Shown: positions 5,588-39,713, numbered from the stretch's first letter. The stretch is DNA of 64,000 nt from Octopus sinensis (GCF_006345805.1 NC_043000.1:22196001-22260000); one strand, 5' to 3'. Program-made: numbers and translations. Notes: generated by a model from the sequence alone, not told the origin.

Positions 5588-5684
5588 CAGGACCACCCTG
5601 AACTCATTGCTGGAGCGCCCTGCATCGAGGACGACGAAGATGGTCACCTGATCTATCACCCGGGAGACGTTCTTCAGGCTCGAT
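5588..5684 (+). CDS. CLK2: CLK exon equivalent to vertebrate exon 4 ([33 protein letters not shown])
   Basis: Conserved DDxxGHLIY motif. Donor GAT|GTACTC at 5685, phase 1, matches the next exon. The start is uncertain: NAGNAG acceptor (5588 or 5591) or an in-frame ATG at 5552. Confidence 0.8.
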
Positions 5685-8600
5685 GTACTCATCATTTCGT
5701 AACGTTTAGCCTAGGATATTATTTGACTTCTTTTTTTTTTTTTTTCATTTTTTTTTTCCATTTTCCTTAATTTTTTTTTTCTCCAATTTTTCCCAAAAAT
5801 GTATTAATGTTTTTGTTTATCTTTGTTTCTTTTACCCCTTCCCCCAATTTTCTTCTTAAATCCTAAAATTCAACTTTCTTTATTTCTCTCTTTAACATTT
5901 CCTTATCTCTAATCTAATTTCCCCATCTATTGTCATTTTTATTCTTTCTATAAGAATTTAAAATTTTCAAAATTTGGGTTGGGGGATATCCAAAATTACA
6001 CATTTTTCTTGATTTAAATTTATCCTTAAGTTTTTTTTTATGCCTATTGTATATGTGATTGTTTTTATCTTGGTCTTCTAATTATTGGAAGATCAACTAT
6101 ATTTCAACCATGCCATCTTTTGTAGGCATTAGTTCTATTATTTTTAATTGAAATATAAACTGCTGAAAAATGAATGCATTTTTCATTCCTTATAAACATT
6201 TCCCCATAAAATATACTTAAATCTAATATTTTAGTATTTTATGGATTAATTAAAAGAATAATTAAAAAATTTTAATTACTCTTTGAATATGCATTAAAAT
6301 TAAATAAAAGGATAGATATAAATAATGGCAATAACCGAAAGCTTAGTGAAATTTTAATTTCATAATCTTAATTTAAAAGATGGGGTAATAATTGCTAAGT
6401 TTTATCTTGAAATACAATTAGGACAGATTAATTTTTAAATATAGTAATTGTTTGGATAGAGTTAACAAATCTTAGTTACAATCACTGAGTAGTTGTTAGT
6501 TTAATTTTTTTTTAATTCTCATATTTTCAATATACTTTTTTAGATTTAAACTGTGTTGTAGAAATAGTAAACTTGAAATAATCCTAGTTTTAATACTAAA
6601 TGATTAATTAATTTAACGATGTTCAGTGAATTTAAATTATACTGAAGATATTTCCATATCCTTTGTTTATATATTATTTTTTGTTATTATAAACACTTGA
6701 AACAAGAATTTACATCTTCCACGTCTGCAGAGTAGCTTAAAAATCAAGTGTTGTATATTAGACTTTGGCTAAACTACTTTTCCCTGTATGAAATGTCTAG
6801 CATATTTTCGTTTCTAAATCAACTGGGGCGATAGCCTTTTTAGTTTCAATTTCTCCAAAACATAATTTATCTCATAAAATTTTTTTTTTTATGTTTCATT
6901 AAATTCTCCCACCTTTTGATAAATTATTTATTTTGATTTTAAGAAATTTAATTGAGGATTGGGTCCATTTGAGTATCTTAAAATTCTTTTAGTCTCCCTC
7001 CCCATCCCTTTTTTTTTCATTTTCCTCTTTAATGCTTTCTTGAAACTGTATAGGTAAATTAAATTGTATTGGCAAATGGATGATTCCCTGTCCCTCTTCC
7101 ATCCAACAAACTACTGTTCTTGTATATTCTTAAATTGTGTGTGTATGTATGTATATATATATATGTATATACATACATATATATATATATATATTTTAAA
7201 TTTTCAGTCCTTAATGTTTTACATGCCTTAGAAACATATCTGATACATTGAACTGAATATAACTACGAAAATTAGAATTTGTTTCATTAGATATGTCAAA
7301 ATCTTTAAGGACACATCTGACATTTTCATACAATATTGGAAGACACTGTGATGTGTACAGATAAATACACACCTTAGACATTTTTTAACGAAGACTTTAA
7401 TGTATTCATTATACTTTTCAACATCATTTCAGAACAACAACACTAGCTTTTATTTAAAAAAAAAAATACTTTTGCATTTTTATATGTCCATACATATATA
7501 GCTTATAGCTTAAGAAGCTAGTTGAAAATCAATTACTAGTTGAAATATATTAGGATACATTAAAGCATTTACTATAAAAAACTATTTTAAAGTTCTCTGA
7601 CCTCTCATATGTGAGGTGCTTTATTTGGATACTTCAGTGCATATTTGATAGCTTAAAATATATTTGTCATAAGTCTTATTCATTTACCCCAAGTATGAAG
7701 CTAATTTATCTACTTCAAAAGTGTGTTAAATCTATCCTAATGGATGAAAACTATATTACTGTAAAACTGTAACTTACTCTCATCCATTGAGCCTTTCAGT
7801 TTTCAAAATAAGATAAATACTGTTTTTATGTAGTTTCGCTGCCAGCCTCTTGTTGCATTGCTATGAAGTGTTTTTCTAAACTGGTAATTAGCCAGTACCA
7901 CTTGTCATATACTAGGGATTATTTGAGCGTTATATTTAATTTCAGATGAAATTATTCAGACCCTTGGTGAAGGCACCTTTGGGAAATGTGTTGAGGTGAA
8001 GGATGTTGCGAGGTAGGTTCTTTAGACTAAGGGAATTTTCTTCATATCTAACATCTTTCTCTTTTTGCAGCAACAAAGTTCAATTTTAAATGCTAGCATG
8101 GTCTTCTTGTTTATTATTTGCTATTTATGAAACGTTTATGCTTAAACGCCCATTGTTTTTTTGCATAACTTTTATTTTTCCTGCACTTCATTTATATTTC
8201 TCACATGAAAATATGACCATTTCTTGTTATGGTCTTTGGCTAAAATTTGCTTTATTTTATTTTATTTTTGGCTGTAGAAATGCTTTTTTAGCTGGGGGTT
8301 AAAAAAAAGTTGCATATGTTAAATGAAGATATCTTCTCTATTTTGTGTCATAAAAGCATTTTCATCCAGTTCCATAAGAATCTCCATCATTCTGATATGT
8401 TGCAACAGTCTATAAACGGTGCATAAAAATGAATCTTGCTTTTCATGGTGTTGCTGAAGCTAGACTAAAGAGTCCTTACTTAATTGTATTGGTGAATTAT
8501 GTTTTTCTGAGTGAAAGTATTTGTAAACTATCAGATAAACTGTAGGATCATTCAGCATGAACAGTGCTGATTGGATATTAGCAGACTAGCTTCCACTATT

Positions 8601-14600: not shown

Positions 14601-17600
14601 TGAATATTTACACAGCAAATAGCAAAAATTCTCAAGATGTTTAAAGATGATTAAATTGTTGAGATTACACCCACTTTGCAACATTCATGTAGGTCTCATT
14701 TACTAGTGTTGATTTTCTAACTCACATTTTAGGTTTTAAACAAATTAATAATCTTTTAAATTATTGGTACATGTTCTAATAAAGCAGTTACTCTTCCAAC
14801 TAGTTTCTCCAACTTTTCTCCAAGTTATGGACATTAAATTTACTCAGTCACTCTCTTCACAAGCTTTCCATAAATGCATGTGCTGCAATTAATTTTGTTT
14901 GTGAAAAAGCTTTGAATTTTTGTTTTTTGCAAGCCGACGTTCAAGATATTCCAGGCAACGCTCTCGTGGGCCGTAAGTAGTTCTATGCTGATGCAAATGG
15001 TTGTGTTAATGCTGCCAATCACACTCCATACCCACTTCCAGCCATATCTTACAGGAATTATTTACCTGTTATACTAATATTCTATGAGACTAATTCAAAT
15101 AATTATTTTGTAATATGTCTTCTTGAATGGTCTTAACAAGGTGTTATTTAGTTTCTTGTGTATTTCTACAAACTTAGAATTCTAATATTAGAACAGATTG
15201 AAATATATATTTTGTGTGAATTATAAAAATAAAAAACAAAAAATTGTATATCAATGAAGTAAGTTTTGGTGAATCAAGTAAGTTTTGGTGAATTGTAGCC
15301 TATTTTCTCTCTCTTCTCTTGACATATTTTATCAACATTTTACTGCATATTACAATGTTTGAGTGATATATGTTTAAGATTACTCCCTTTCTTAATACAT
15401 CCTTTTATGGGTGTATTGAAATGTCTATATCAATTACATTTAGCATGGGGGAATTAGACACAATACAGCATTTTTTGTTTTTTTGTACCTTAATTCTGAT
15501 TTCAATAATTAGTCAAAAAATTTGTGGATATTGCATGTTTTTTCTGTTCCTCGCCATAGTAACATTTTAATATTCTTTTCCAATTATTTAATATTTCAAA
15601 ATTAAGTACATTCCTTCCTTTTCCTCCTCCTCCTGATAAAACAAGCAGTTTTATGGGATTAATTATAATGATCATAAAATGTGATCCATTCTCTGATTTT
15701 GAGTTGATTAAAAGTGCATGAACGATGAAATTTTATGTGGAGTTTCAAGTATAAAGATATTGGTTAGTATGTCATCCAGAGTATTCTTTTACTGGTTTCA
15801 GTCTTTAAACTGCGACCATTCTAGGGCACTCTATTTGTTTTTGTCAGTTATATTAATGCCCTTACTTATTCTTGTACTTCTTTTATAGATGTCTTTATTT
15901 CAACATCTAAGTTCACCTATTGAGTTAAACTCACTAAAGGTGGATATAAATACCACAATGTACCTGCACTGATATACACATTTGTAATTTTTTTTGGTCT
16001 TACATAAAAGATGCATTAGATGTATGTAGAGGTTGGTATAATTGTATGTAAGTAAGGCAGATGATTTCCTCATACATAAAAGTTTTGTATGCTTCACTTT
16101 ATATCAACAATACTTATCAGCAAGTCTAAAATAATCTACAATTATCTTTGGCTCTGGCAAGCACTGTTGGCTTATCACTCAAGCAACCCACATGCAATTA
16201 CATACATCTTACAACTTCTGCAGTTTCCACCTACCAAATTTCACTCCTAGTGCATTGGTTAACCTGAAGCTAGAAGTAATTTCTGTTCACAGTGTTGAGC
16301 AGTGGGTCAAACCTGGAAACATGTGGCTATGAAGTGAAGCTCTTAACTGCACAACCATGCTTGATAGCTTTCTGTCATTTTTTTTTATCTAAATGCATGG
16401 CTTCTCTGCATTAATTAGTGGAAAATAAATTGAAAATTCAGTTAAATGTTCACATATATAAACTATAATTTAATTTCAGTAGATTAGGCTGGGCTAATTT
16501 TTTTTACCACCCAATGAAGAATGTTTATGGAAATTTAAAACTTTTTGTCTTCTAATGATTTTATTGTCCATAAAATTATTTGGTAATTTGTCAGTGTGTG
16601 AAAAAATAAATGTGTTGATTGTGAAGACTTGAACAAAGAATTAATTCCTTCATAGTTTGGATTTCAGTTCTAGAAATGTTAAAAGTAGACAGTTTAGTAC
16701 TATATATTCTTGAATGGGCTCTATCTGGGTATTTATTGAGTATACTAGTTTCCTTGTTATATAGGATGTTTATCTTGTTGTTTAACCCCAAATCAGCTTT
16801 GATTGAGCGGGCTTATGATCAAAAATCTACTCAATCAAGATTGAAGTATTCTAAACATTACTATCCCATTGTTTTCTACGCACAGTGTACCTAGGACCAT
16901 ACTGTTTAATGTGTTGTCTCAGGTGGTATGGTGGAATTTGAGAGTGATTTAGCTGCTAATTTCTAGCCTCTTGGATGACCACAGTCTCCATCATTTTCCT
17001 TCAACTAAACAACCTGATGTTGATGGACGTGTCCACAGGATGTTATTTTCTGTTCGTTTCCAAAGAAGAGATGAAATTATATCAATGTTCTCATACATTT
17101 TTAGTGTTTGCATGTTCTACAGTACCAGTTACGCTGATGTGATTAATCAGCTTGTAATTTCCTGAACATGTTATCCTCATGGTATTACTGGTATTCAGTT
17201 CAAGAGATGTTGTTGTGGTCTGGCATTTCGGTCATCATTTTGTAGATCTGGAACTATGTTGCCCAGTGTGTCCTTCTTTCTTAAGGCAATATTGTGTGAT
17301 TAAAGAGTTGGCTGCTATTTTTAGCACATTGAGAATGACCACACAGCAGGCCCTTTCATTGCTTCAACCATTGAAGTGTTGTTGGTGATTGTTATTAATA
17401 AGAGCTTCTCATTATGAGATTTTTCTGCTCATTTTTCCAAAAGAATTTACTTATGGGACATGTATTTTATGAGAGTGTTTTTTTTTTTTTATTTTTAATT
17501 TTTATTTATTTATTTTTTTTATTACCCTATCCCACCTCTATTGTTGGCAACTTTTATTCATAATTGTTTCACATTTCTTTTCAGAAATGGTCAAATAGCT

Positions 17601-20600
17601 GCTTTGAAAATTATAAAAAATGTTGAAAAATATCGAGAAGCTGCAAAGTTAGAGATCAATGTTCTTGAGAAGTTAAAAGAAAAGGATCCAGAAGGCAAAT
17701 AGTTAGTACTCTCTCTTTCCCTCTCTCTCTCTTACTCTCTCTGTCTTTCTTTGTGTGTGTGTGTATCCAAATATACTGCAAGGTAATGACTAAATTTTTG
17801 TTTCATTTAAATTGGTGTTTGAAGGGAAAACGATGTTCAAGAAAGATTAGTAGTGGGGGGTGCATGGGTATATATGTGGCTTTCTTCATCTCTCTGGCAA
17901 AGCAAGTCAGCAGGAGGAGAATAGCTTGAAGTAGGATTAAGAAGGTGGAAAATTCCAAGTAGCATAGTTTTGTTGTAATTGTAGTAAACTTAGGTAAACT
18001 GAAAGAGAAACAGCTGGAAGAATTAGTTGGTACATAAGGGGTGGGGTACATTTTTTCTTTTCTTTAATTCTAGTTTTATTATCTATTAATAATTTTGATA
18101 TTAAAAAAAAAAAAATGCAAAAGCAAAAAAAAGTCACAGTTCAACCCAGACCATTAATCTGATTCCATAGCTGAACAATATAGAGTAAATCAATACAAGT
18201 CTTGTATATAATGGATTGGCATCAACTCAATTTGCATGTGTGTGTGTGTATATATATACATATATATTTTATTATTATTATTATTATTATATTTTGTAAC
18301 TTTTTAAAGTTAGATTTTAACCAGAGATGAACCTTCAGCTTCTCTTTGTACATAGATGCACTTTGCATCATGATAAACCCCTGCTACTTATGTCAGAGCC
18401 TATTTTAAAAATCAAAGCTGTAAACAGAACACATACAGTATGTATGTACTCTCCTTTTAACAGTCCCATAACAGTGTAAGATTTATATTATTATTTGATT
18501 TATTTATGCTCATTTACATGTCTTAAGCATGCAGTTCATGTGTTGCATTCGTGCAGGAAGCATTGCAACTTGTTTGCGCATGCATACACAAATATGAAAG
18601 AGTTGAATCTAAAATGTAAAATTTTTCAAAAACTTTAAAATATTAACAGTCTAGGGAGTGAATAGGATTACTGCATAATGATTGTTTTTTTTTTCTTTTT
18701 CTCTTTTTTCTTTGTCCAGACACAGTTTGTAAGTTTAAAATTTATAATTTCTTTTTCCATTTCAGTTTGTGTGTACGGATGCTGGATTGGTTTGATTATC
18801 ATGGGCATATGTGTATAGCATTTGATATGCTTGGTCTTAGTGTATTTGATTTTTTGGTAAGTTACAGAAGAGTTCTTTTACCAAATTTAATTTGCTATTA
18901 AACTCATGTTTAATATTTCAATTTTTTTCTTTTAATTTTTAAATTTTAATTGGTTTATATGCATATGGTATTTCTAATGCTTACGTCTGGACATGTTACT
19001 TAATGCAATTTTTTAAAATTTTCTTCTGCAGAAAGACAACACTTATTATCCATATCCTCTCGATCAAGTTCGAAATATCTCCTATCAGTTGTGCTATGCA
19101 GTAAATTGTAAGTTTCAGTAAATTTCCATTTTTATCATCCATGAACCTTTTCATTTTTATGTAGTCAGGGGAACAAGGTGTATCTGTGACTTTTGTAATG
19201 CTCTACAAGACTGAAATAAATATGATTGCTGTTTAGCTTGAATAACTGTCAATTGATATCCATAAGGAAAACATTGGTGAACTGGCTGAATTGTCACCAT
19301 ATTGGACAAAATGATTAGCATTTCTTTTGGTTCTCTACATTCTGAGTTCAAATCTCACCAAGGCCAACTTTGTCTTTCATCCCCTTGGGGGCTAATAAAA
19401 TAAAATACCAGGCTAGTACTAGGTGGGTGGTGGGGGTCAATGTAATTGACTTCCTCTTTTCTCAAAAAATTGCTGGCCTTGAAGCCCTACTATGGACTGG
19501 CATCCCATTCAGGGAGAGTATTGTAATCTCAGTTACTTACGTGCCGTTGAAACCAGCTAACTGGACTTGTGAGTCCTGAGGCTCAGGGGGTGGGGTGGAG
19601 GCATAGATAGGAAGGGTTGCTGTTCTGGGAAGATAAGGTTAGTTGGATGAGAAATGGTGGGGGGTGGGATATGCAGCCAGCTGTCTCTATAGGGTACTAG
19701 CGGTTGTAGTAGTGGCAGAAAGGACAGATTGATAAGAAAGGTTTGATTAACATAGACTTATTCCTGGAATTTAACTTTGATGAATACATTTATTCTACAT
19801 CTTACCAATTGAATTAGTTTTCATTCTTAGATTATAATTTAACAATAAAATTTTCCCATATTGGTCTTTTCTTTCTTTCAGTAAACAAATGTTTAATTCA
19901 TTCAAACTAAAATGGTTAGAATTATTAGATGGTTGTTTGTTTTGATTATAAAGTTATAATCTGTGTGTGTTTATACAAAACAGTAAATAGCTTTTTCCCT
20001 CTTTTTTTTTTTTTTTTTTTTAGTCCTCCATGAGAACCAGCTCACGCATACAGACTTGAAACCAGAAAACATACTTTTCGTTAACTCCGATTTTGAAGTA
20101 TCATATAATGCTAAAAAGGTAATATTGTTTTTATCTGCATCTATTATAATAATAATAATAATAATAATAATAATTGTGTACAGTGCTCAGGTGCACTACA
20201 ACTCATCTAAAATGTATATATAATCAGGTGTAGTTTCGGCGGATTTCGGAAAGCATGAGGGCCTTAAAAGATGCAGTGTCATGGCAGTCAACAACTGACG
20301 CAGGCAGTTTATTCCATGCTTCAGCAACTCTGAGCGTGAAAAAATGTTTCTGAAAGTCATGGGAGCTGTATTGTTTTCTGACTTTGTAGGCATGTCCACG
20401 TGTGTTAGACACATGGAGATCAAAAAGGTGTTCAGTGTTGTTGTTGGTGAGGTGGTTGATAACTTTGTGGGTGTTTACCAAGTCCGTCGCCAAACGCCGG
20501 AGCTTCAGTGAATCCATGCCCAGGGAAACAAGGCGCTCAGAATATGGTAGGTGTCTGATGGAGGGTATGCGTTTGGTTGCACGTCTCTGGACAGATTCCA

Positions 20601-23600
20601 GGAGGTCAATGTTCTGTGCAAGATAGGGGCTCCAAACTGATGATGCGAATTCCAAGTGTGGTCGTACCATAGCTGTATACAGTTTTAAATAGATGGCTGG
20701 AGAGCGGCTAACAAAAGACCTGCTGAGTGATGCCAAGACACCCTCGGCCTTCCTGACAATCTTAGAGATATAATAATCAATCTGTACATAATTGAGAGCA
20801 TGTGCTTGATTGTAATTATTTTCTCATGAAATATGTTTTTCATCTTTGTTTCATATTTTACATTTTCTAGAGGCGAGATATGCGGAGAGTAAAAAATACA
20901 GATATAAGATTAATAGACTTTGGATCTGCAACATTTGATCATGAACACCACAGCACTATTGTATCAACGAGGCATTATAGAGCTCCTGAAGTTATTTTGG
21001 GTAAGTGTATTATAGTTTTCTTTTACTTGGGAATTGCTAGCCTTGTTTATATTTATTGCAGTTTTATAGATAGTTTCTCAGACAATACAAAAGGAATTAA
21101 TTTGTGGCAGCTGGAGAAGTATCGAAAATGATTAGCTTGATAAATGAACCCAACTCCAGACACAATTCAACTGCCAGTACATGACTGATTTATTATTGTT
21201 ACACTATCCATCCATTCAGAAACTTAGGACTTAAAGATTAAAGGGTGAAAATTTGGAAAACGGGTCTTGACATTTTGAAAATATAAAAATGTGATTTATC
21301 ACCACCACCCACTTATATGAAGTGTTTGTCTTTATTGCATGTTATTTTAATTGTACTTTCTGGAATGTTGTGGTTTTTCCAGTAGAAGTTCCGTATTACA
21401 GTTGAAGTGGTAAAATAACTTTAATTTGAATGGATTTAGATTCGAAACTTTTGGAATAAAACTTGGCTAGTTTGGTAAAAGCAATGCACATTCACTTTGG
21501 AATGTGGTTGGTTCCCTATTGAAAATGTTGTCCCGCTGGAGCCCGCATTCTGGATTCACCAGATACTGATGTAATGATTCTAATGATACTTGAGCATTTA
21601 AGTTATCATTTACCTAGTTTTGTGAGTATAAATGGGACAACATGCTGACGAGGTCAGTGCAACTGTAAGTCTTGTTTCTGAGATCAATACACTTAGCTCT
21701 CAACAGACAGATTTACCTGGTTTTAAGTATTGCAGCTATGGTGATTCATCGTCATCGTTGTTTAATGTCTGTGTTCCATGCTAGCATGGGTGGGGCAGTT
21801 TCACAAAAGCCGGCCAGGCAGAAGCCTACACCAGACTTCTATGACTGTTTTGACAGGAATTTTACAGCGGGATGTCCTTCCTAACACCATCCACTCAGCA
21901 GAGTGGACTTAGTGCTTTTTACATGGCACAAGCACAAGGTCAGTTTTGGGAAAGCTTTTACAGCTGGATGCCCTTCTGAACACCAACTACTTTACAGTGT
22001 GGACTGGGTGTTGTTTTAAGTAGCACCTGCACTGACAGGGTCACCAAGTATCTGCAAGACAAAAAAAAAAACCTACTTTCAAGAGGAGAGGGTCATTGGA
22101 GGAAGTGATCTTGTGATCTAGTGTCAGATGATGAAAGGTTATAGTGAGACAGAGACATAGAAACTGTAGAGGAAGTACAGAGAGATCTGTGTACCAACTT
22201 TGATTCTTCACCTGGGCTAAGTTGCAACAATAACTGGAAGTGAACATCAACTAAATATATGCTTGAGATTTTGAGAACAAATGTATCATGATGAGCTAGG
22301 ACTTAATAGCAGCTGTATAAACCATGCCAAAGCAGTCACTGGAGCAAATTCTGTCAAACTACGCAACCCATGCCAGCATGGAACATGATGATAATGAATC
22401 CATTAGTTTTAAATTCCATAAATCTTAGTTGAAACCTTTCAGTGAAATTTTCTTTGCTGACTGTATTTGCCTCATACAGCGATTGACCTTGATCTTAAAT
22501 AAGAAGTAAAGCTAAATTTATTCAGCCCTTACATTAAGAATTTATTTTGTCTTGCAATGATTTGTATTTATCCAGCAATACTTTTTTTGTATTTATATGT
22601 ATGCCAGCATGGAAGGCAGACGTTAAACAATGATGATGATGGATCATTTTTCTGTGTCTCTGCAATAATTTTCTGCATAACTGATATTTTTCTCTTTGTA
22701 ATTTTAGAATTAGGTTGGTCTCAACCCTGTGATGTGTGGAGTATAGGTTGTATCATGTTTGAGCTATACACAGGATACACATTATTTCAGGTAAATTGCT
22801 TTAATTACTTAATTAAATGTTTATTAAATTATATAATAGTATGATGTTTATTAATTAAACTTTTTGGCTATCAAAGGTACACTTACTTGCTATTTGCTTT
22901 TTTACAAGTATTCTTTTCAGCCTCTATATGAATTTTATCCTTAATTTGATTTTACTGTCATTCTTCCAAACTATTATGACTATCTGTTACTGTTGTTCTA
23001 TAGTCAATAGAATAGGCAACATTATTGATTTAGTTTAGTATATTTTCTTGATATTATACATAGACATGCTGACGTGCATTTTTGTTTTTTAATTCTACTT
23101 CTTAGCAAAATGTTATTTTGTTTAATATTATTCTTGTAAATCTTTGTATTTTATCTTAAATATATTTAGTGTGAACACACAATCAACATTGTATTGGTTG
23201 CTTTGACATTTACTTTTTTGTTTTGGGTTAGACACATGACAATAAGGAGCATTTGGCAATGATGGAACGGATACTGGGCAGTATACCATATCGGATGGCA
23301 AAAAGATCTCGGTAAGCTTATTGACTCAGAGTTGATATTGGACATTAGAAAGGATGGCTATAGAACAAAAATTAAACAAAAATCTAACTTAAATAGGTGA
23401 AATAATATTTTAATTGATAAACTATGATTACTTTATAAATATATTTTTCCTAATTTTAAATTTGACAGTAATGTTGAGTGGGGTGGGGTGTTGCATAATG
23501 AATCATTAACATTTATTACAACATATATTACTTTAATTGTTAAGCAATTATATTTGCAAAAGTGTATCATAACATTTCATATTGGTATTTCTTTTTATTA

Positions 23601-23831: not shown

Positions 23832-26182
23832 TACATTAGTACATAACTGCCAGGAGATAAAAGCATGCTAGATTTTTTTAGGGTATTAATTTCTTATATA
23901 ATTCAATAGTTAGTTACAATTAATAGTGTAGGGGTAGAATATAGCAATGTAATTACCTGCTTATTAAAAGAATGCAGAAATGTTGAAATGTACTCAAGAT
24001 GTCAATAAAAGTTGTATTAACAATATGATAAAATGATTTCATAAATTAGTTTATACGGTAGTGTCATGGCTCAAATATGAGTGAAGATAAAATGTAATTA
24101 CTTGCATATCAAACAAATTGTCTGTTTTTATAACAGTCCTGTGTTACCCCTTCTTTTAAACTTTAAATTGCATTTTATGAACTGTAGCATTGTTGGTTAC
24201 AGTTTTCCAGTGGGATAATCATTGGTTCACTGTCTATTAACAATGGTGAGAGTGACAAGAGGTTGTCAGTGGAACTTTGGCTGAACAAATAAATACAAAT
24301 TATTTTTGTGTAAAAGCACCAGTTTGTTTGTTTCTCCAAAGTGCAATTAACAAAAAAAAAAAAGACAATTTACATGGGATGTATTTTGTATTCCTGTTGT
24401 AATATTTAGTAAATTTTAAGTGATTGTGTGGCATCTTATGTGATTTACATTTAGTAGATATTACATGAGTCAAAGACATTGTTGATTTTGAAACACAAGT
24501 TTAAGAAAATCCATAAATGATGATTTATTTTCAAATTATAATAACCCTGAAGTAAACTTTAATTATAATAAAATTCACTTGTCATTTTGTTCCTATTGTT
24601 TTAAGAACAAATTACTTCTGGCATGGTCGCCTTGATTGGGACTCGACTACTTCTGCTGGGAGATATGTAAGGGAGAACTGTAAACCACTTTATGTAAGTA
24701 CATGCTCAGCCTTCTCTGTAACTACTACCATAAGTGCACTATAGTGCATGACTTACTATTTTCCAACTGTAAGAAACCACTGAAGTGTATGACGTTTGGG
24801 CAATGTGCCAGCAGGTAACAACTAATTTGTTCACAACACTTTTGGTGTGTTGTCTTTTAGGTAGTAGATACATTTCTAAACTTAAGCTCTTTCTAATGTA
24901 AAATCTCTCTGTTGAAAACAAAGCTTCGTTTTTTGGGGGATAAACAAAATTGCCAAGTTTCATTTATTTATTGTGTAAACTTAATAAAAAAAATGTCCTA
25001 AAATATATAAGCTATTTTCTCAAGGTGATTTTTTTCAAAATTTTCTAAAGTTATATCTGAAGAAGTAAAATCTTATCTTGTAAGCCTTCTTTGGGAGGTG
25101 ACATTGATATTTCTAGAATAGTTATATTTTGGTGTAACTCTATTTTAATCCATTCCCGATTAGATAGTTTCCTATTTACTCTTTCAATAATCTTAATTCA
25201 CAATTTTTAATTTAAGCTCAACATCTAAAATCTTTTCATTGGGGACTAATGTTGTTTACTTGCTTGTTCAAATTTCCTTTCAATTGTTTCTTCAGTTAGC
25301 CATTTAAATTTGGTAGTAGTTGCCAGTGGGGCAATGCATGTGTTTTGTGGATCCTTGAATCTGCCTGCAAGTTCTGTTTGTATTTTTATTCTTCTGACCA
25401 AACTTCTAATTTGTTATTTATTAATCTCCCAGCATATTTAGTACAAACTCTTGGTAATAACCCAAGTTCCCACCCCATAAATTTTTGTCTCTTTAGTTGA
25501 TTAGTTTACCACTTTTCTTTTTGCTGCCAGCATTCATAATTTGTTTCAATACTAATATAACTTACCTTTTATTAGTTGTTTCCATTGAACTGAATGTAGT
25601 TTGACTTGGGTAGCATGCTGCATGGCTATTCTCATTAGCTCATACGGCTTTGTTTGTTTGTTTGTTTTTCTAATCCCTAACCCCACACTCCCCATATTTA
25701 TCTCCAAAGAAAAAGCAAGTATTTCTACCATGGGAAACTGGACTGGGATGAAAAAAACTCATCTGGGCGGTATATTCGGGAAAATTGCAAACCACTTAAG
25801 GTGAGTAACAAGTTATTTAGCTGATTCCTTTTCAAAATGTGTTTAACCAATGGGAGGAGGAGGAGGGGAATTAAAGTTAATATTTCATAATTTTTGTAAG
25901 CATTGTGGATTTGTAATTTACAAATCTCCTTTTACATTGGATTGTTCCAGATAGTGGATTGGCAGAAATAGAGGAGTTTAAGACAAATGCCTTGTGGTAT
26001 TTTGTTATGACTCTTTACAAACCCTGCCGAGTTGAATTTGGCTTTTTATTGTTCTGGGACTGATAAAATAGTATCAGTCAAGTAACATGGATCATTTATA
26101 AACCTCACTAGGATTTGTGCTTATGTTAGGAATGAAGGCAACAACTTAATATGTAAACAGAATACATACACTCACACGTGTA

Positions 26183-31262: not shown

Positions 31263-31263
31263 C

Positions 31264-31296
<33 letters not shown>

Positions 31297-31319
31297 CATA
31301 TATTACATATATACATGTG

Positions 31320-31353
<34 letters not shown>

Positions 31354-31432
31354 TATATTATACATATACACACACATATATATATATATACATATACACA
31401 CCATATATATATATATATATATATACACATAT

Positions 31433-31470
<38 letters not shown>

Positions 31471-34354
31471 CACATATATATACACATATATATACACATA
31501 TATATATATATACACATATACACATATATATACATATGCACACATACATACGTCCTGTTCATGATTATTATTTTTTTCTTTAGTAAACCTTTCTTGTAGA
31601 AATTTCATTTGAGTCTTTCTTGGAAGAAAGTATCATTTGTGTTTCTGTCAAGGATTATATCAGAATAACATTTGAGATGCATTGTTAATAATAAAAAAAA
31701 AAAATGAACTTGTTCTGTAGATACACTTCTGTTTCATTATGGTAGTTAATGCAAGAAGCCTAGATGTAGAGCCATTATTACTAGTCAATTTATATATACT
31801 GACATACATACCATACAACCATTTAAACCCATTTTTGAAGTGAGCATGTGTGTCCTTTTTGTATGCTTATTAGCAGTGTCTATCTTTAATGTCCCCTTCA
31901 TTTTCATAAGAAAACATTGTAAATTATGTGGATATGTTGCTTGGAAAACAAAACCTTGGCTAGACTAATATTTCATTGCTATGTCCATCCTTTGAAGTTT
32001 TCATATTTGTACCATGTGATGAAGGTATATTAAAAAGACAAAAAAAAGAAAACTGATTTGTTGTGGTATTAGTTGAGATGAAATGATATTCCAAGTTACT
32101 AATATTCAGGTACTAATGTGATTGTGTGCATGAATAGTAAAATATTGATGACTGAAATAATACTATTTGCTTATTTACACCTTCCCTCCTTCCATATTAG
32201 TTTGGTACACCTTGAAAACAAATGTAACCAAGTGTATTTAGTAGCTAGCTCTAGGAATCAGTAATTCCAAAACCATGTGTGTAGATATTATTACATCTTG
32301 CAGCTTTTCTAAGTGGTTCTAAAAATATCATACCTGGATAACTGTTGCTACGGCCAAGGAAAGCAAACATGCCACCAAAAGTCATAGTTATGTTAGCTAT
32401 TTCTCTATTAGATAAAGAATAAATAAATTGGATGGGTGGAAATAATGTTCTTTTCATCAAGAATATAAAAAATTTACATGTCTATTAGAAATTTATTCGT
32501 ATTACAGTTAAAGGTAATATTTGAGGAAACTATTATTAAGAAGAGCAGATTTTCACAGAATATTTTTTATTGTGATATATTTTTTAGAGTTAGCTAGCTT
32601 CTGCTCAACTTTTATTTTTTCTTTGTAAAATTGGTATTTTTTTTTTTTACACTTTAGTTCTTGTGATTTTTGTAGAAAACCATTTCATATTTATATCTAT
32701 TTATAATAAAATAGAAATCTTTTAAGATGTGTAAATTTTAACATATCATCTCAGAGTGTTTAAAGAATACTGTCAAGCTATTTACACCAATTGCTATTTC
32801 AGGGAAATTTTATTAACAGCCTGCTTTCATCATTTTGGTAGTGTCACACTAATTTAAAATAGCTTGGATGTTTTTAATGATTGATGTAACTGACCTATTA
32901 CAGCTTTGCAGAATGGGCAACATCACCAAGTTTAGATACAATAACCTTTTACCAATCCCCTCTATGTGACGTGTGCCTCCCTCTTTCTTCCTTACAGCAC
33001 TATTTAAGAGACAAAGGGATCCAACATCTTCAGCTCTTTGATCTCATTGAAAAGATGCTTGAGTATGAGCCTCATTACAGGATAACTCTTGCAGAAACAC
33101 TTGCTCACCCTTTCTTCAAACCCTTATTAAAAGAGCAACCACATCTAGAGCACAAGCCATCCGTGCCGAAGGAACCAAGGATCGTGGACCGGCGCAAAAG
33201 TTACCAGGGCAGTGAGTTATCATCTGAAAACCATGGTGACCGTGACTGTGTGAAAACAAAGAGTGAGGGTCCAGGCAAATCTGATGTCAGCTACAGCTAC
33301 TTGCCAGGTGATCATCTCCAACATTAATAGTTGCATGGGACTTTAAACTTGAGCATGTTATTCTCCCATTTTCACCCAACCCACCACTTGTATTCACTTC
33401 ACTTCACTTCACATTCATGGTAATGACAGCAGCTATCTCTACCACCAGTATCACTATTACCTCTAATTATCTCTACTAACAGTGAAAAATAATCTGTTGG
33501 AGGGGCGGGGTGTAGGTTATCATTTCAAGTTGTTTGTGTTGCTACTATATTTATTGTCTTTTTTTTTTCTGTAACAATTCAGAATGCAGATAATAATAAT
33601 AATAATAATAATAATATTTACTTCAGTTTTACATTGGATATCTTAACTTTTAATCAAATTTATGTATCACTAAATGATTAGAGCTATTGGCCCTAAGAGA
33701 TTGCCTGGGGTTTGAGTTTGGAACTATTGGCAGAGTATTTGAGGGTACAGACTTCTTACTGCTTATAGCAGTAAGTTGTATCGCTCCGTGGTGTCTATAT
33801 ACAGCTCAGTGACATGGACTGGCCGGAGTTGAGCATCACTTTGTAAATAGATAACTGTCGACAAACTGTGACTCCTTTAACCCCCTCATATTGATCTGAT
33901 GGTCAGTTGCTTGACTTGTCATTAACAGAGGATCAGCCATTTTGACTCGAACCCAGAAAATCAGGTATCTCTTAATGACAATCAGGTGGATGAAGCAAAG
34001 AAAGTTCCATGCTTGGCAATGACCTGAATTTGAAGTTATGACTTACGAGCTTGCAATAGTGCATTACTTAATTCACTCAACCATTTTTTTCCTTCATCTT
34101 TGCATACATCCACACGCTTCGCTTTCACTCATTTCTACACCAAATTAGATACATATGTAGCTCACCTAATTATCACACACTTAAAGATACTCATTTAGAT
34201 TTCTCTTTCTTAATATTGAAGTATCTCTATTCGCACAGGTATTCAAATTAAAATGGTAAAATGGAGTCAAAACTATTAAACTATTCCATCCATTGTATTA
34301 CAGTCAGTTGTTGCAAACTGAATTAAAAGCATAATTCCAGTTTAATATTTACAT

Positions 34355-37101: not shown

Positions 37102-39713
37102 AAAAGTATCGATTATTCAAATATCCTATATTACCAGTTGCTAAATCTTGGTAGATCCTAATTCACTCTATCATTTTCGAGGCAGTGCTCCAACATGGCC
37201 TTACTCAGATGACTAAGACAAGTAAAATATAAGAAATAAATAATTTTTGCTGATGCTAGCCACAACTATTTTCCTCACATTCTGTTTATTCTTAATTGAT
37301 TAAACTCTGGTTTTTCAAGCATTCTAACTTTTTAAAAAATGAGGAAAGTTCATGAAAACAGAGGTTTTGTGTAAAGCATTTCTTATTCATTTTTGTTCAA
37401 AGAAGTGTTTTTTGTTCATTTTTATTCAAAACAACTTACTTTTTCTTTATCTTTTTACCCCATCATTTTGTTCTTAAACTCTTATTAAAACAGCACTAAA
37501 CATTGTTTTTGGAGTTGAAGGAGATTATAGCTGCTGGGTACTGTTCTTTTTAGCATTTAGATGCACAGTTTAATCAAGGGAAAAAAAACCCCAGTAAAAT
37601 TAAATTTAATTTTATGTGACTGATTGAGTAAACAAAACGTCATTATTTTCTATTTAAACAGTTTAATACAGCAAGTACATAGTTGGGATAACTGAATCCT
37701 CATACAAATTTGGATTCCTCATTAATAATACTTCAGTAAACGCATCATTGTAACGACTTAATTTACTCCATAGATTTGACTGAATTAAAAAAAAAACAAA
37801 AATTGATTCCAGCCTTTGCAAGTGTGTGTTTGTGTGTAAAAAAAATAAGTATTTGTTCTTCTGTTGGTTTGTACAGTTTAGATTAGTAGATCATGGTAAT
37901 CCACTCACTCTTCCTGGTCCATCCCTGATGAGTGACATGTTTCCAGTAGATCTGGATTTATGAATGTCTATCATTCTTTAAAGAGGGGAAAAGATTCAAG
38001 TTGTTAGAGAAGGTGATTATGTATGGTTATCTCCATCACCTTTGAGGTAATGAGTGTGGTAGGACAGTAGCTGTGTGGGTTAGAAAAGGTCCCTTTGGAA
38101 TGGGGACATGTGTGCTGAGTTGTATGAAAGTAAGGGACATTGTTAGGATGGCTGAATATAGGTTGAGAGATTTGTGTCAGTGAGTAATAGGATGTATGGA
38201 TCAGTCGACAGATGTTAGAAAAAAGGAAGAAGGATTGTCCTGTGAGTTAGAAAAGAGGAAGAAGGATTGTCCTGTGAGTTGAGGTTGGTCTTTTACTTAT
38301 AGGAAGGTTTAGAGGGTGCCAGTGACATAAGGTGATAATAACTGCTACTGAAAGCATGGCTTGGTCTAAATATTTGCAATGAATCAAAGTCTGCTCCAGG
38401 CCCCCATGAGTCAGGTAGTGGCATTCGATTAATTACCACCCAAAGAAAGAAGAGAGCGCTCTGTGGCATGCACAGGAACTACATTAGATTAATTTCATCT
38501 TAGTCATATGAACACCTGTATTAGTTACCGATAAAATATACCATTGCTTTACAATTATATATAGTAGAATAATGGTGAACATATACAATCTCATAAATAC
38601 TAAACTGTAAGAAAAAAGAAAATAAACAAAACAGTGGTCAGAGGATCACTGAAACTGCAGATATTCAGCTTCAAACTTTGGTGAACCATTTAGACAATTC
38701 ACTGGTTTTTTGTGCCTGCATCTGTCTCAGTTTTGCCTTTTGGGTGGATTTGGTAGATGGAAACTGAAAGAAGCCCATCACATACCTCTGTGTATGTGTC
38801 TGTGTTTGCCCCCTCTTCACCGCTTGTGTTTTTGTGTTTACATTCCTGTAACTTAGCAGTTCAGCATAAGAGACTGATAAAATAAGTACCAGGCTTTAAA
38901 AAAAGAATAAGCACTGGGGTTGATTCATTTGACTATAAACCCTTCAAGTTGGTGCTCCAGCATGGCCACAGTCTAATGACTGAAACAGTAAAAGATAAAA
39001 GATGTGTTTGTTTATTGTTTAGGAAGGAACCTTTTACATGGGTTTTATAGGAGTACAAGATTTAAGAGTTCAAATAATTTTCTTTCATTTTTTTCTTTTT
39101 TATTTCTCTGTCTTTTTCTTTGTTTCTTCCATAATGTTTATCAAATCAAATCCAGAACTGATGATTTAATTTTTTTTTTTCTCTTCTTCACTATTAATGG
39201 TTCTGACCTCAATGGCTTGACTTCTCTGAAGATATATTTCATGTTAATTTCTTTTCTCTTTTCTTTCTTAATGATGGAAAAAAAAAACTCTTATTCAGTA
39301 AAACGTATTCTTTAAAATATCAAGCATGATAAATAAATGCAAGTTCCCTTTATATTTTGGTATCCTACAATTTGCATATAAATTTAATCTGTTTGGACAA
39401 CAGTTTTTCTTTTCTTGTAGTCTCTATTTCATCCTTCAAAATATTGAAAATCAATAATAATATTTTCAGAAAATTGCTTGTATGGTCATATGTTTATTTA
39501 CTTACATTGATGTCTATTTTTCGTTTTTTAATACAGCGGTACATAATGGAGCCCAACAATGAGGACCACGTGCTTCTGTTTGATTTGATTTGGAAGATGC
39601 TACGATATGATCCCCTGGCGCGAATAACACTAAAAGAAGCTTTGAAGGATCCATTTTTTAAAAAGTCCTGCTATTTGGGTGGACGTGCTAGGTCACATAG
39701 TTTAAGTAGATAA
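5588..39713 (+). CDS. CLK2: LAMMER dual-specificity kinase, CLK2-like / Doa ortholog (5'-partial, multi-exon gene span)
   Basis: Exons join in frame through GT-AG sites to give [69 protein letters not shown]. The LAMMER motif is diagnostic. The exact paralog name is by similarity from memory. Confidence 0.95.
7946..8012 (+). CDS. CLK2: CLK exon, Gly-rich loop ([23 protein letters not shown])
   Basis: ttcag| acceptor, AG|GTAGGT donor, 67 nt, phase 1 to 2. Confidence 0.95.
14934..14972 (+). CDS. CLK2: Putative 39-nt cassette exon encoding [14 protein letters not shown]
   Basis: U-rich tract ending tttttgcaag|, donor CC|GTAAGT. Length 3n, phase 2/2 compatible, no stop, CpG-rich in a CpG-poor intron. 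Confidence 0.6.
17585..17701 (+). CDS. CLK2: CLK exon, catalytic Lys and helix C ([39 protein letters not shown])
   Basis: ttttcag| acceptor, TA|GTTAGT donor, 117 nt, phase 2/2. Confidence 0.95.
18766..18856 (+). CDS. CLK2: CLK exon ([30 protein letters not shown])
   Basis: ttcag| acceptor, TTG|GTAAGT donor, 91 nt. Confidence 0.95.
19032..19107 (+). CDS. CLK2: CLK exon ([25 protein letters not shown])
   Basis: ctgcag| acceptor, T|GTAAGT donor, 76 nt. Confidence 0.95.
20024..20118 (+). CDS. CLK2: CLK exon, catalytic loop ([32 protein letters not shown])
   Basis: poly-T tag| acceptor, AAG|GTAATA donor, 95 nt. Confidence 0.95.
20154..20768 (-). mobile_element. 5'-truncated CR1-clade LINE (3' end of ORF2, 3'UTR and (ATT)n tail)
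   Basis: Minus-strand ORF 20224-20736 contains [48 protein letters not shown], typical of the CR1 ORF2 C-terminus. (AAT)n at 20148-20174. Candidate TSD TATAATAAT at 20145-20153 and 20769-20777. Confidence 0.85.
20871..21000 (+). CDS. CLK2: CLK exon, DFG and activation segment ([43 protein letters not shown])
   Basis: ttctag| acceptor, G|GTAAGT donor, 130 nt. Confidence 0.97.
22708..22790 (+). CDS. CLK2: CLK exon ([28 protein letters not shown])
   Basis: ttttag| acceptor, CAG|GTAAAT donor, 83 nt. Confidence 0.97.
23232..23311 (+). CDS. CLK2: CLK exon with LAMMER motif ([27 protein letters not shown])
   Basis: ttag| acceptor, CG|GTAAGC donor, 80 nt, ends in phase 2. Confidence 0.97.
24606..24693 (+). 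CDS. CLK2: Mutually exclusive exon A ([29 protein letters not shown])
   Basis: ttttaag| acceptor, TAT|GTAAGT donor, 88 nt, phase 2 to 0; homologous to exon B. Confidence 0.9.
25710..25800 (+). CDS. CLK2: Mutually exclusive exon B ([30 protein letters not shown])
   Basis: CCCTAAC branch-point consensus at 25676-25682, ccaaag| acceptor, AAG|GTGAGT donor, 91 nt, phase 2 to 0. Confidence 0.9.
26221..26388 (-). repeat. Short interspersed repeat, same family as 56485-56640, hammerhead segment deleted
   Basis: Reverse complement shares ttcctttctg...cgtaaaagactttctcac and ttgttcatacac with the 56.5-kb copy; flanked by (TA)n. Confidence 0.55.
30038..31550. repeat. About 1.5-kb compound (TA)n/(TACA)n microsatellite array
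   Basis: Directly visible; source of the spurious Ile/Tyr ORFs. Confidence 0.98.
32998..33327 (+). CDS. CLK2: Alternative last exon 1 ([40 protein letters not shown] plus a long tail, stop)
   Basis: Pyrimidine tract and ttacag| acceptor, phase 0, kinase subdomain XI, TAA at 33325-33327. Confidence 0.9.
   Translation, partial: HYLRDKGIQHLQLFDLIEKMLEYEPHYRITLAETLAHPFFKPLLKEQPHLEHKPSVPKEPRIVDRRKSYQGSELSSENHGDRDCVKTKSEGPGKSDVSYSYLPGDHLQH
38030..38480 (-). mobile_element. Decayed Penelope-like (Neptune-type) linker fragment
   Basis: Minus-strand remnants [10 protein letters not shown] and KGTF resemble the YHPxNL and GTFPC linker motifs; many lesions. Confidence 0.4.
39537..39713 (+). CDS. CLK2: Alternative last exon 2 ([58 protein letters not shown])
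   Basis: tttttaatacag| acceptor, phase 0; ends in RSHSLSR like Drosophila Doa. Confidence 0.9.
   Translation, partial: RYIMEPNNEDHVLLFDLIWKMLRYDPLARITLKEALKDPFFKKSCYLGGRARSHSLSR

What the first reader, a model, noticed from the sequence alone, without database searches (positions are those of the whole stretch)
5588..39713. A single splicing-regulator kinase gene encoding a combinatorial set of catalytic domains
Seen: cassette exon (2) x mutually exclusive pair (2) x last exon (2) gives at least 8 in-frame kinase-domain variants, plus several candidate off-switch events. Inference: where vertebrates diversified CLK by gene duplication (CLK1-4), this lineage may do so by exon duplication inside one locus, with feedback through the SR proteins it phosphorylates. 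Coupling of A/B choice to last-exon choice cannot be read from DNA.
Basis: inference. Interest (0 to 1): 0.75.

Follow-up and report, generated by a model that had tools for sequence, protein, structure and literature searches.

The report
Octopus CLK kinase's ancient alternative exons
The octopus's one splicing-regulator kinase gene (CLK) can build eight versions of its catalytic domain from an optional mini-exon and two pairs of duplicated exons; all eight are already in public gene models, and both exon pairs are hundreds of millions of years old, shared with clams and sea slugs (one also with lamp shells and ribbon worms), which no paper found here describes.

Summary
Window 5588-39713 (+) is the kinase part of the Octopus vulgaris/sinensis CLK2/Doa-type LAMMER kinase gene. 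It has three independent in-frame choices.

- A 39-nt RS-rich microexon (14934-14972).
- A tandem-duplicated, mutually exclusive pair, A (24606-24693) and B (25710-25800).
- A duplicated C-terminal pair, L1 (32998-33307) and L2 (39537-39713).

All eight combinations are exact matches to public predicted isoforms, including O. sinensis RefSeq X9 and X10.

One correction: in those models L1 is not a last exon. It splices into L2, which is then read out of frame (…AVHNGAQQ*).

The main addition is age. The order E9-A-B-L1-L2, with the same splice phases, is also present in a bivalve, a gastropod and Argonauta. The A/B pair alone is present in a brachiopod and a nemertean. A barnacle locus has one B-type exon, and the arthropod and human CLK sequences seen are all B-type. 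So this is not an octopus or cephalopod invention.

A/B encodes the β-sheet, Trp and helix αH part of the MAPK-like insert, which covers the SRPK-type docking groove. A functional difference between isoforms is inferred, not shown.

This is a new member of a known kind (tandem-exon substitution, as in JNK1). It is annotated but apparently undescribed.

The parts
4748..5587 (+). Unusually conserved intron sequence upstream of E1. It includes the ATG (5552) used by one O. vulgaris model (P0001, MGDEIRWGG…).
   Evidence: Window 4748-5891 aligns to Argonauta at 81% over 1158 nt, whereas most intron sequence does not align at all. P0001 starts inside this intron.
5588..5684 (+). E1, 97 nt, encoding [32 protein letters not shown]. 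It has a NAGNAG acceptor (CAG|CAG, giving +/-Q) and a weak donor (GAT|GTACTC). Skipping it shifts the frame to a stop in E2.
   Evidence: It is 97/97 nt identical to Argonauta against 8.1% divergence in constitutive exons (binomial P = 2.7e-4).
5685..5708 (+). Intronic motif just after the E1 donor (GTACTCATCATTTCGTAACGTT). It contains a second GT 14 nt downstream, a candidate frameshifting alternative 5' splice site.
   Evidence: Conserved in Octopus, Argonauta, the bivalve Mactra and the brachiopod Lingula.
7946..8012 (+). E2, the Gly-rich loop ([22 protein letters not shown]).
14934..14972 (+). Cassette microexon C, 39 nt, in frame. It inserts [14 protein letters not shown] in the β2-β3 turn of the N-lobe.
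   Evidence: Present and absent in public isoforms. AG/GT and the reading frame are kept in Argonauta, with 5 synonymous and 2 non-synonymous codon differences. A similar RS insert is in the cephalopod transcript P0003. The turn position comes from the model's strands 202-209 and 215-222.
17585..17701 (+). E3, 117 nt, carrying the catalytic Lys (AALKII) and helix αC. Skipping it stays in frame and would give a kinase-dead protein; the single O. bimaculoides RefSeq model does this.
   Evidence: P0127 reads …SRGP|LCVRM….
18766..18856 (+). E4
19032..19107 (+). E5
20024..20118 (+). E6, the catalytic loop ([10 protein letters not shown]).
20871..21000 (+). E7, with DFG, the activation segment and APE.
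22708..22790 (+). E8
23232..23311 (+). E9, the [11 protein letters not shown] signature (helix αG). It ends in phase 2.
24606..24693 (+). Exon A (88 nt), encoding (R)[29 protein letters not shown]. This is the upstream, lophotrochozoan-specific member of the mutually exclusive pair.
   Evidence: It is 87/88 nt identical to Argonauta (P = 0.005). At the protein level it is 97% identical to the Elysia and P0003 exon A, which are identical to each other, and 83% to Mactra.
25710..25800 (+). Exon B (91 nt), encoding (R)[30 protein letters not shown]. This is the canonical form, as in arthropods and human.
32998..33307 (+). Exon L1 (310 nt), encoding [44 protein letters not shown]… plus an approximately 60-aa tail. 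Its internal donor CCAG|GTGATC joins L2. The read-through stop is at 33325-33327.
   Evidence: The donor and about 70 nt beyond it are conserved in Argonauta. Orthologous L1 exons are in Mactra, Ruditapes and Elysia.
39537..39713 (+). Exon L2, encoding [43 protein letters not shown]…RARSHSLSR*. After L1 it is read in the +1 frame ([11 protein letters not shown] at 39560-39562).

Best explanation
This is the kinase-coding part of the single octopus CLK (Doa/CLK2-type LAMMER kinase) gene. Three independent splice choices remodel the catalytic domain without destroying it.

1. A cephalopod-restricted 39-nt RS-rich microexon adds 13 residues to the exposed β2-β3 turn.
2. A pair of tandem-duplicated exons, A and B, is used one at a time. 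They encode the two-strand β-sheet, the buried Trp and the CLK-specific helix αH of the MAPK-like insert. In human CLK1 and CLK3 this element covers the SRPK-type docking groove and buries the LAMMER helix.
3. A second duplicated pair, L1 and L2, encodes the last C-lobe helices and the tail. Including L1 replaces L2's coding function by shifting its frame. The protein then loses the conserved …RSHSLSR end and gains a different tail.

At the protein level, exclusivity of A and B is enforced by reading frame: both exons, or neither, give a premature stop.

Shown here:
- The exon anatomy.
- Its exact match to public isoform models.
- Its orthologous conservation. A/B is in Mollusca, Brachiopoda and Nemertea. 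L1/L2 is in three mollusc classes. The barnacle locus has neither duplicate, and the arthropod and human CLK sequences seen carry only the B and L2 forms.

Inferred:
- The A/B and L1/L2 forms differ in substrate or partner docking, localisation or regulation.
- Exon choice is regulated by tissue, stage or temperature.
For: Identity:
- Best solved-structure match is human CLK2, E = 1.7e-176.
- The C+/A/L1 form gives a full Pkinase match, 1-263 of 263.
- [11 protein letters not shown] and HTD are present.

Anatomy and isoforms:
- Searches give the exon map.
- All eight combinations are exact public isoforms.
- None of the 174 proteins fetched carries A and B in frame together: 21 are A-type and 143 B-type.

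Age:
- The same order, with the same phase-1 start and phase-0 end, is in Mactra, Elysia and Lingula, Argonauta, an unidentified animal contig and Lineus.
- Lineus RefSeq X1 uses B and X2 uses A. X3 uses both and hits a stop.
- Lingula, Lineus and L005 have no L1.
- The barnacle locus has one B-type exon, no A-type exon and no L1-type exon.

Orthology:
- Octopus A is 83-97% identical to mollusc A exons and 63% to its own B.
- L1 exons share [HY]Y[LI][KR]D[KR]G..H.

Constraint:
- A and L1 keep every near-invariant CLK position.
- The L1 helices are modelled at pLDDT 85-95.
- Synonymous sites in A are almost frozen.

Structure mapping: CLK1 residues 400-432 form the MAPK-like insert, with the β-sheet at 409-418, Trp419 and αH at 424-432 blocking the SRPK1-type groove (PMC2667211).
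Against: - No RNA-seq or cDNA data could be examined here. RefSeq isoform combinations are assembled by software from junction evidence, so abundance, tissue pattern and coupling are unknown.
- No functional difference between A and B, or between L1 and L2, was tested.
- Helix αH itself is almost identical in A and B. The differences sit in the first strand, the loop after the Trp and the last residue, so any effect on docking may be subtle.
- Argonauta exon B has three non-synonymous changes, including LDWD to LKWD. B may be under weaker constraint there.
- The AlphaFold model is only moderately confident overall (mean pLDDT 56.5) and scores 59-76 over exon A.
- Only one ecdysozoan locus was examined, and no deuterostome or cnidarian locus.
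Confidence: 0.85

Rival explanations
1. Exons A, L1 and C are annotation artefacts or decaying pseudo-exons, and only the canonical B + L2 kinase is made.
For: All octopus isoforms seen are computer-predicted models. The Elysia gene model uses only B + L2, and Mactra's L2 is called as a separate gene.
Against: Intact AG/GT sites and phases are kept across three phyla. Octopus exon A is 97% identical in protein to gastropod exon A. Nucleotide conservation to Argonauta is near-perfect. Assembled transcripts from other cephalopods carry C + A + L1 (P0003), A + L1 (P0140) and L1 (P0141-P0143). Pseudo-exons would not stay open and conserved for this long.
Confidence: 0.03
2. L1 inclusion, and perhaps exon A, is mainly an off-switch. 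It would make an impaired or dominant-negative kinase, or a decay target, rather than a second functional catalytic domain.
For: L1 removes the widely conserved C-terminal …RSHSLSR motif and frameshifts L2. CLK genes are known to regulate themselves through non-productive splicing, as with human CLK1 exon 4 (PMC12691408).
Against: With L1, the stop lies in the last exon, so nonsense-mediated decay is not expected. L1 keeps all near-invariant residues of the final helices, including the subdomain XI Arg. It is modelled with high confidence. The isoform gives a complete Pkinase match. L1 has been conserved at the protein level across three mollusc classes.
Confidence: 0.1
3. The choices are tightly coupled or tissue-fixed, so only two or three of the eight combinations exist in vivo, and 'combinatorial' overstates the case.
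For: Nothing here phases the events. RefSeq builds combinations from separate junctions.
Against: Models or transcripts show A+L1, A+L2, B+L1 and B+L2 in octopus. Bivalves show A+L2, B+L1 and A+L1. Apart from P0003 and P0140 (A+L1), these are also models.
Confidence: 0.35
4. The A/B and L1/L2 pairs arose independently, in parallel, in each lineage rather than once in a common ancestor.
For: Convergent tandem exon duplication is reported to be common (PMC9741552).
Against: A exons from different phyla share derived states that B exons and the outgroup sequences lack. These are Trp in F/Y-W-H-G-R-L, a one-residue deletion at the start, and a terminal Y or H instead of K or R. The order is always A upstream of B, with identical phases. 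L1 exons share the HYL[KR]DKG signature and always lie upstream of L2.
Confidence: 0.05

Closest known systems
JNK1 (MAPK8): exons 6a/6b combined with short (p46) or long (p54) C-termini
   Same: It is a CMGC kinase in which a mutually exclusive pair of duplicated exons inside the kinase domain combines with an alternative C-terminal end. This gives 2 x 2 isoforms, and the pattern is conserved from fish to human. The exon pair has been proposed to tune substrate specificity (PMC7259801).
   Different: The kinase family and the structural element differ: JNK exon 6 is not the CMGC insert. [quoted passage not shown] The CLK case adds a third choice, the RS microexon. CLK is itself a splicing regulator.
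Human tandem-duplicated exon substitutions, for example FYN exon 7A/7B (FynT/FynB)
   Same: Homologous adjacent exons of the same phase are swapped inside a kinase. The events are ancient and the isoforms differ in binding properties (PMC9741552).
   Different: CLK does not appear in the main text of that human catalogue (0 occurrences). The CLK pair was found here only in lophotrochozoans.
Human CLK1 exon 4 skipping and intron retention (autoregulation)
   Same: E1 lies just before the kinase domain. Its length shifts the frame if skipped (stop in E2). Its splice sites are weak, and both its exon and intron sequences are extremely conserved. Human CLK1 exon 4 lies beyond residue 130; skipping it gives a premature stop and NMD under SR-protein control (PMC12691408).
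   Different: No E1-skipped octopus isoform was seen. That E1 is homologous to human exon 4 is my inference from position, not a tested alignment of gene structures. This is an on/off switch, not the domain diversification that is the main finding.
Drosophila Doa and C. elegans CLK isoforms
   Same: A single invertebrate CLK gene yields several isoforms. Octopus also has RS-rich and non-RS alternative N-termini.
   Different: According to the 2025 review, those isoforms differ only in their N-termini (PMC12795684). Here the catalytic domain itself varies.
Vertebrate CLK1-4 paralogues
   Same: The MAPK-like insertion is among the regions most divergent between CLK1 and CLK3 (PMC2667211). That is the element swapped by A/B.
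   Different: In vertebrates the diversity comes from gene duplication. Human CLK2 is B-like and L2-like here; CLK1, 3 and 4 are so from memory only.

Membership tests
CLK / LAMMER dual-specificity kinases | [11 protein letters not shown] signature in helix αG | tested here: met
   [12 protein letters not shown] is encoded by E9, 23232-23311.
CLK / LAMMER dual-specificity kinases | Complete protein kinase domain with HTD (not HRD) in the catalytic loop, and closest similarity to CLK structures | tested here: met
   [10 protein letters not shown] is in E6. Pfam Pkinase matches 1-263 of 263. Human CLK2 structures score E = 1.7e-176 and DYRKs about 1e-56.
CLK / LAMMER dual-specificity kinases | MAPK-like insert with the buried Trp, followed by CLK-specific helix αH | tested here: met
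   Both A and B keep …LDWD…GRY[VI]RENCKPL. The model shows a β-hairpin and then a helix at residues 440-460 of P0002. The element definitions come from PMC2667211.
CLK / LAMMER dual-specificity kinases | Arg/Ser-rich N-terminal region | tested here: met
   Public isoforms that match the window exactly begin MPKSRRRRRSPSRD…RSYRHHRPSYSSQSSR. These exons lie upstream of the window.
CLK / LAMMER dual-specificity kinases | Phosphorylates SR proteins and autophosphorylates on Tyr | not testable with these tools
   This needs a biochemical assay.
Mutually exclusive tandem-duplicated exons (A/B) | Adjacent, homologous exons of similar length and the same phase | tested here: met
   88 and 91 nt, both starting in phase 1 and ending in phase 0, 1016 nt apart, 65.5% aa identity, E = 1e-13.
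Mutually exclusive tandem-duplicated exons (A/B) | Exactly one is used in productive mRNAs | tested here: met
   None of 174 fetched proteins has both in frame. Both or neither gives a frameshift and an early stop. Lineus X3 carries both and terminates early. This rests on models and assembled transcripts, not read counts.
Mutually exclusive tandem-duplicated exons (A/B) | A dedicated exclusion mechanism: steric, U2/U12 incompatibility, or competing RNA structures | tested here: inconclusive
   The 1016-nt intron rules out steric hindrance, and all sites are GT-AG of the U2 type. One 13-bp duplex (24718-24730 with 25311-25323) keeps 11 bp in Argonauta, but with no convincing covariation. Reading frame plus NMD is enough to explain exclusivity at the protein level.
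Alternative last exons (L1/L2) | Each terminal exon has its own stop and poly(A) site and is not spliced to the other | tested here: not met
   In all octopus and Argonauta models, and in three cephalopod sequences (P0140, P0142, P0143), L1 is spliced to L2 (…YLP|AVHNGA…). Only P0141 shows read-through. L1/L2 is better described as a duplicated penultimate cassette that frameshifts the terminal exon. In bivalve models L1 carries its own stop.
In-frame cassette microexon (C) | A short exon with length a multiple of 3, proper splice sites, seen both included and skipped, and conserved | tested here: met
   39 nt, AG|…|GTAAGT. C+ and C- isoforms exist. The frame and splice sites are kept in Argonauta. 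An RS insert sits at the same place in P0003. It was not found in bivalve, gastropod or brachiopod loci.
CLK1 exon-4-like autoregulatory exon (E1) | A frameshifting exon before the kinase domain, with conserved flanking introns, that is skipped or has retained introns in some transcripts | tested here: inconclusive
   97 nt, and skipping gives a stop in E2. It is 100% identical in nucleotides to Argonauta, with 840 nt of conserved upstream intron. The donor-flank motif is conserved as far as a brachiopod. One model starts inside the upstream intron (P0001). No skipped isoform was seen.

The most novel reading that the evidence does not exclude
Lophotrochozoans have kept, for more than half a billion years, a splice-selected choice between two versions of the CLK element that caps the substrate-docking groove (A/B). 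Molluscs added a second choice of C-lobe end and tail (L1/L2). Together these would give one gene two to four kinases with different substrate or partner selectivity, or different thermal behaviour. The master kinase of SR-protein splicing factors would then itself be reprogrammed by alternative splicing of its catalytic domain, alongside a separately conserved E1 on/off exon.
Probability: 0.35. Interest if true: 0.75.

Novelty: new member of a known kind. Interest (0 to 1): 0.55.

Why it matters
CLKs set the phosphorylation state of SR splicing factors. How they choose substrates without an SRPK-like docking groove is still discussed. Here nature provides matched pairs of CLK catalytic domains that differ only in the groove-covering insert, or only in the last helices and tail, and these have been kept under strong purifying selection across phyla. 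That makes a clean comparison possible: swap one exon and ask what changes.

It also shows that a recent family-wide CLK survey, which treats invertebrate CLKs as single-product genes differing only in their N-termini, misses a conserved layer of catalytic-domain diversity.

The practical lesson for annotation is that several mollusc gene models omit A or L1, or split off L2.

Tried and rejected
1. Competing RNA structures for A/B choice. RNAduplex between blocks conserved with Argonauta gave loose, uninformative duplexes; only B-downstream with block 32137-32474 reached z = -3.2. The inverted-repeat scan was swamped by (TA)n. A helix search restricted to conserved blocks gave a few 11-13-bp candidates. 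One survives in Argonauta (24718-24730 with 25311-25323), one is broken there, and one is just exon purines against the L1 polypyrimidine tract. This is not convincing.

2. Protein searches aimed at the A/L1 forms returned few hits, with almost no organism names: 17 proteins and 13 short fragments. They did not give the taxonomic survey I wanted.

3. Five contig look-ups failed because only the longest product of a gene is indexed. As a result only one arthropod locus was examined.

4. Rfam and tRNA scans of the window found nothing. There is therefore no intronic RNA gene from a known (Rfam or tRNA) family that would explain the conserved intron near E1.

5. Pfam gave no hit for the 170-aa ORF in intron 6.

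6. I considered the idea that L1 and L2 are classical alternative last exons and rejected it (see the membership test).

7. I did not run a fold search or a second structure prediction.


Full report
**What the region is**

Hand reconstruction of the + strand between 5588 and 39713 gives eleven constitutive or alternative coding exons plus two duplicated pairs. All have AG/GT junctions and consistent phases. The product is a CLK/Doa-type LAMMER kinase.
- It contains [11 protein letters not shown] and an HTD catalytic loop.
- Even in its least canonical form it matches the whole Pfam kinase domain.
- Its closest solved relatives are human CLK2 structures (E = 1.7e-176).
- Translations match Octopus vulgaris and O. 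sinensis proteins exactly, so the window comes from one of these two very close species.
- The N-terminal exons (an RS-rich domain, or an alternative non-RS start) lie upstream of the window.

**Checking the observation: the three choices**

- A 39-nt microexon at 14934-14972 replaces one Arg with [14 protein letters not shown].
- Exons A (24606-24693, 88 nt) and B (25710-25800, 91 nt) are homologous (65.5% aa identity, E = 1e-13 within the window). They share their phases. They cannot be used together or both omitted without a frameshift and an early stop.
- Exons L1 (32998-33307) and L2 (39537-39713) are homologous over the last C-lobe helices (65.6% over 32 aa, E about 1e-9).
- No further copies of any exon exist in the window.
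- All eight combinations are in frame. All eight are exact substrings of public predicted isoforms: six appear, and the remaining two are O. sinensis X9 and X10.

Those isoform combinations are computed from junction evidence, so they do not show which combinations coexist on real molecules.

**One correction**

In every octopus and Argonauta model, and in three cephalopod sequences from JGI and Logan assemblies (P0140, P0142, P0143), L1 is not terminal.
- A donor inside it (CCAG|GTGATC) joins the L2 acceptor. L2 is then read in the +1 frame and stops after eight codons (…YLP|AVHNGAQQ*).
- The donor is conserved in Argonauta.
It is seen in one assembled transcript of another cephalopod (P0141).
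- In bivalve models L1 carries its own stop.

Functionally the effect is the same. The protein ends either with L2 and the widely conserved …RSHSLSR, or with L1 and a different tail.

**How old it is**

The table summarises which duplicated exons each examined locus carries.

| Species or locus | Group | A and B | L1 |
|---|---|---|---|
| Octopus (window) | Cephalopod | both | yes |
| Argonauta hians | Cephalopod | both | yes |
| Mactra antiquata | Bivalve | both | yes |
| Elysia chlorotica | Gastropod | both | yes |
| Lingula anatina | Brachiopod | both | not found |
| Lineus longissimus | Nemertean | both | not found |
| L005 (ENA contig) | Unidentified animal | both | not found |
| Amphibalanus | Barnacle | one B-type exon | none |

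- In the mollusc loci the order is E9-A-B-L1-L2. In the others it is E9-A-B-L2.
- The phase-1 start and phase-0 end of A and B are the same wherever I checked them (Mactra, Elysia, Lingula, Lineus). In Argonauta, AG and GT sit at the same exon ends.
- Ruditapes isoforms show A+L2 and B+L1.
- Lineus RefSeq has B (X1), A (X2) and both with a premature stop (X3).
- All the arthropod proteins retrieved are B-type and L2-type. So are the human CLK2 sequences seen here.

The A exons of different phyla share derived states that B exons and the outgroup sequences lack: Trp in [FY][FY]WHGRL, one residue fewer at the start, and a terminal Tyr or His.
- Octopus A is 97% identical to the A exon of Elysia and of the cephalopod transcript P0003. 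Those two are identical to each other.
- Octopus A is only 63% identical to octopus B.
- L1 exons share [HY]Y[LI][KR]D[KR]G..H.

The simplest reading is this.
- One A/B duplication occurred before molluscs, brachiopods and nemerteans separated. By general knowledge that was by the early Cambrian.
- One L1/L2 duplication occurred before cephalopods, bivalves and gastropods separated.
- The RS microexon arose later, since it was found only in cephalopods.

**Evidence that the alternatives are functional coding exons**

- A and L1 retain every invariant and near-invariant position of a 51-sequence CLK alignment.
- The L1 helices are modelled at pLDDT 85-95. The model as a whole is mediocre (mean 56.5) and scores 59-76 over A.
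- Between Octopus and Argonauta the constitutive exons differ at 8.1% of positions, almost all synonymous. Exon A differs at 1 of 88 (P = 0.005) and E1 at 0 of 97 (P = 2.7e-4).
- This suggests RNA-level constraints on top of the protein constraints, as is usual for regulated exons.
- Argonauta exon B carries three amino-acid changes, one of them in LDWD.

**What the modules encode**

By alignment with human CLK1 and the description of Bullock et al. (PMC2667211):
- A/B corresponds roughly to CLK1 residues 407-437.
- That stretch includes the two-strand β-sheet (409-418), the strictly conserved Trp419 that packs on the LAMMER helix, and the CLK-specific helix αH (424-432). Helix αH covers the groove that SRPK1 uses to dock RS domains.
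- The same paper lists the MAPK-like insertion among the regions most divergent between CLK1 and CLK3.
- A and B differ mainly in the first strand, in the loop after the Trp and in the last residue. Helix αH itself is nearly unchanged.
- L1/L2 encodes the remaining C-lobe helices and the C-terminal tail.
- The microexon sits in the β2-β3 turn.

From this I infer, but have not shown, that the choices tune docking, partner binding, localisation or regulation rather than catalysis itself.

**How exclusivity works**

- The A-B intron is 1016 nt and all sites are ordinary GT-AG. Steric hindrance and spliceosome incompatibility are therefore unlikely.
- The reading frame guarantees that A+B and no-A/B mRNAs carry premature stops. 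A Lineus model documents the A+B product.
- A search for competing RNA structures gave one modest candidate and no covariation.
- My working model is splice-site or regulator competition, with NMD removing the errors. This is inference.

**Off-switch candidates**

- E1 (97 nt) has a purine-rich, weak acceptor with a NAGNAG (+/-Q isoforms) and a weak donor. Skipping it gives a stop in E2.
- E1 is identical in nucleotides to Argonauta. The 840 nt of intron upstream is 81% conserved.
- The motif after its donor, including a second GT 14 nt downstream, is conserved in a bivalve and a brachiopod.
- One O. vulgaris model starts inside the upstream intron (P0001).
- This resembles human CLK1 exon 4, whose skipping gives a premature stop and NMD under SR-protein control (PMC12691408). 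Homology of the two exons is my inference from position.
- E3 skipping is in frame, would remove the catalytic Lys, and appears in the lone O. bimaculoides model (P0127). That model may be an artefact.

**Comparison with what is known, and novelty**

- Tandem-exon substitution inside kinases is a known kind. JNK1 combines exons 6a/6b with two C-terminal ends to give four isoforms (PMC7259801). FYN has 7A/7B (PMC9741552).
- CLK is not in the main text of that human catalogue.
- A 2025 phylogenetic and structural survey of CLKs reports single CLK genes in molluscs and brachiopods. It mentions invertebrate isoforms only as N-terminal variants (PMC12795684).
- Seven literature searches found no description of catalytic-domain alternative exons in any CLK. 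The library is incomplete, so absence is not proof.

I rate this a new member of a known kind.

**Limits**

- There are no expression data.
- Only one ecdysozoan locus was examined, and no deuterostome or non-bilaterian locus.
- No annelid or flatworm was identified by name.
- There is no functional assay.

Noticed in passing
window 4748-5891: E1 and its flanks are far more conserved between Octopus and Argonauta than any other part of the gene: 81% over 1158 nt, with the exon itself 97/97. The 22 nt after the E1 donor are conserved as far as a bivalve and a brachiopod, and include a second GT 14 nt downstream. This is a candidate ancient autoregulatory splice switch, like human CLK1 exon 4.
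   Followed up: partly
window 5586-5590: A NAGNAG acceptor (CAG|CAG) at the start of E1. Public isoforms exist with and without the extra Gln (…SSRQDHPEL versus …SSRDHPEL).
   Followed up: yes
window 17585-17701 (E3): The only O. bimaculoides RefSeq model (XP_014781440.2) joins the RS microexon directly to E4. That skips E3 in frame and removes the catalytic Lys and helix αC. It is either a kinase-dead isoform or a model artefact.
   Followed up: no
window 30038-31537: A 1.5-kb degenerate (AT)n microsatellite (about 766 copies, GC about 14%) in the B-L1 intron. Shorter (TA)n tracts at 23774-23829 and 26388-26446 flank the A/B pair and are self-complementary.
   Followed up: partly
window 20224-20736 (- strand): A 170-aa ORF in the E6-E7 intron (…[23 protein letters not shown]…). 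From memory it looks like the C-terminal tail of a LINE-type retroelement protein. Pfam gives no hit.
   Followed up: partly
window 38700-64000: The region downstream of the gene, and the stretch just upstream of L2 (38735-39003), are full of dispersed 170-300-bp repeats at 68-87% identity (SINE-like). A near-identical 167-bp tandem pair sits at 63701-64000. No tRNA-like heads were detected.
   Followed up: partly
L002 43340-43567 and 45635-45862 (Elysia chlorotica): The L2 exon appears twice with an identical protein sequence, 2.3 kb apart. This may be an assembly duplication. The annotated Elysia gene uses only B + L2, although intact A and L1 exons are present.
   Followed up: no
L001 57229-58132 (Mactra antiquata): The Mactra L2 exon is annotated as part of a separate 111-aa gene downstream of the CLK model. 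The canonical C-terminus is therefore missing from that species' CLK annotation.
   Followed up: no
L004 77109-77199 (Argonauta hians exon B): Argonauta exon B has three amino-acid changes relative to Octopus (LDWD to LKWD, K to N, PLK to PFK) and only one synonymous change. Exon A is unchanged. Constraint on B may be relaxed in that lineage.
   Followed up: no
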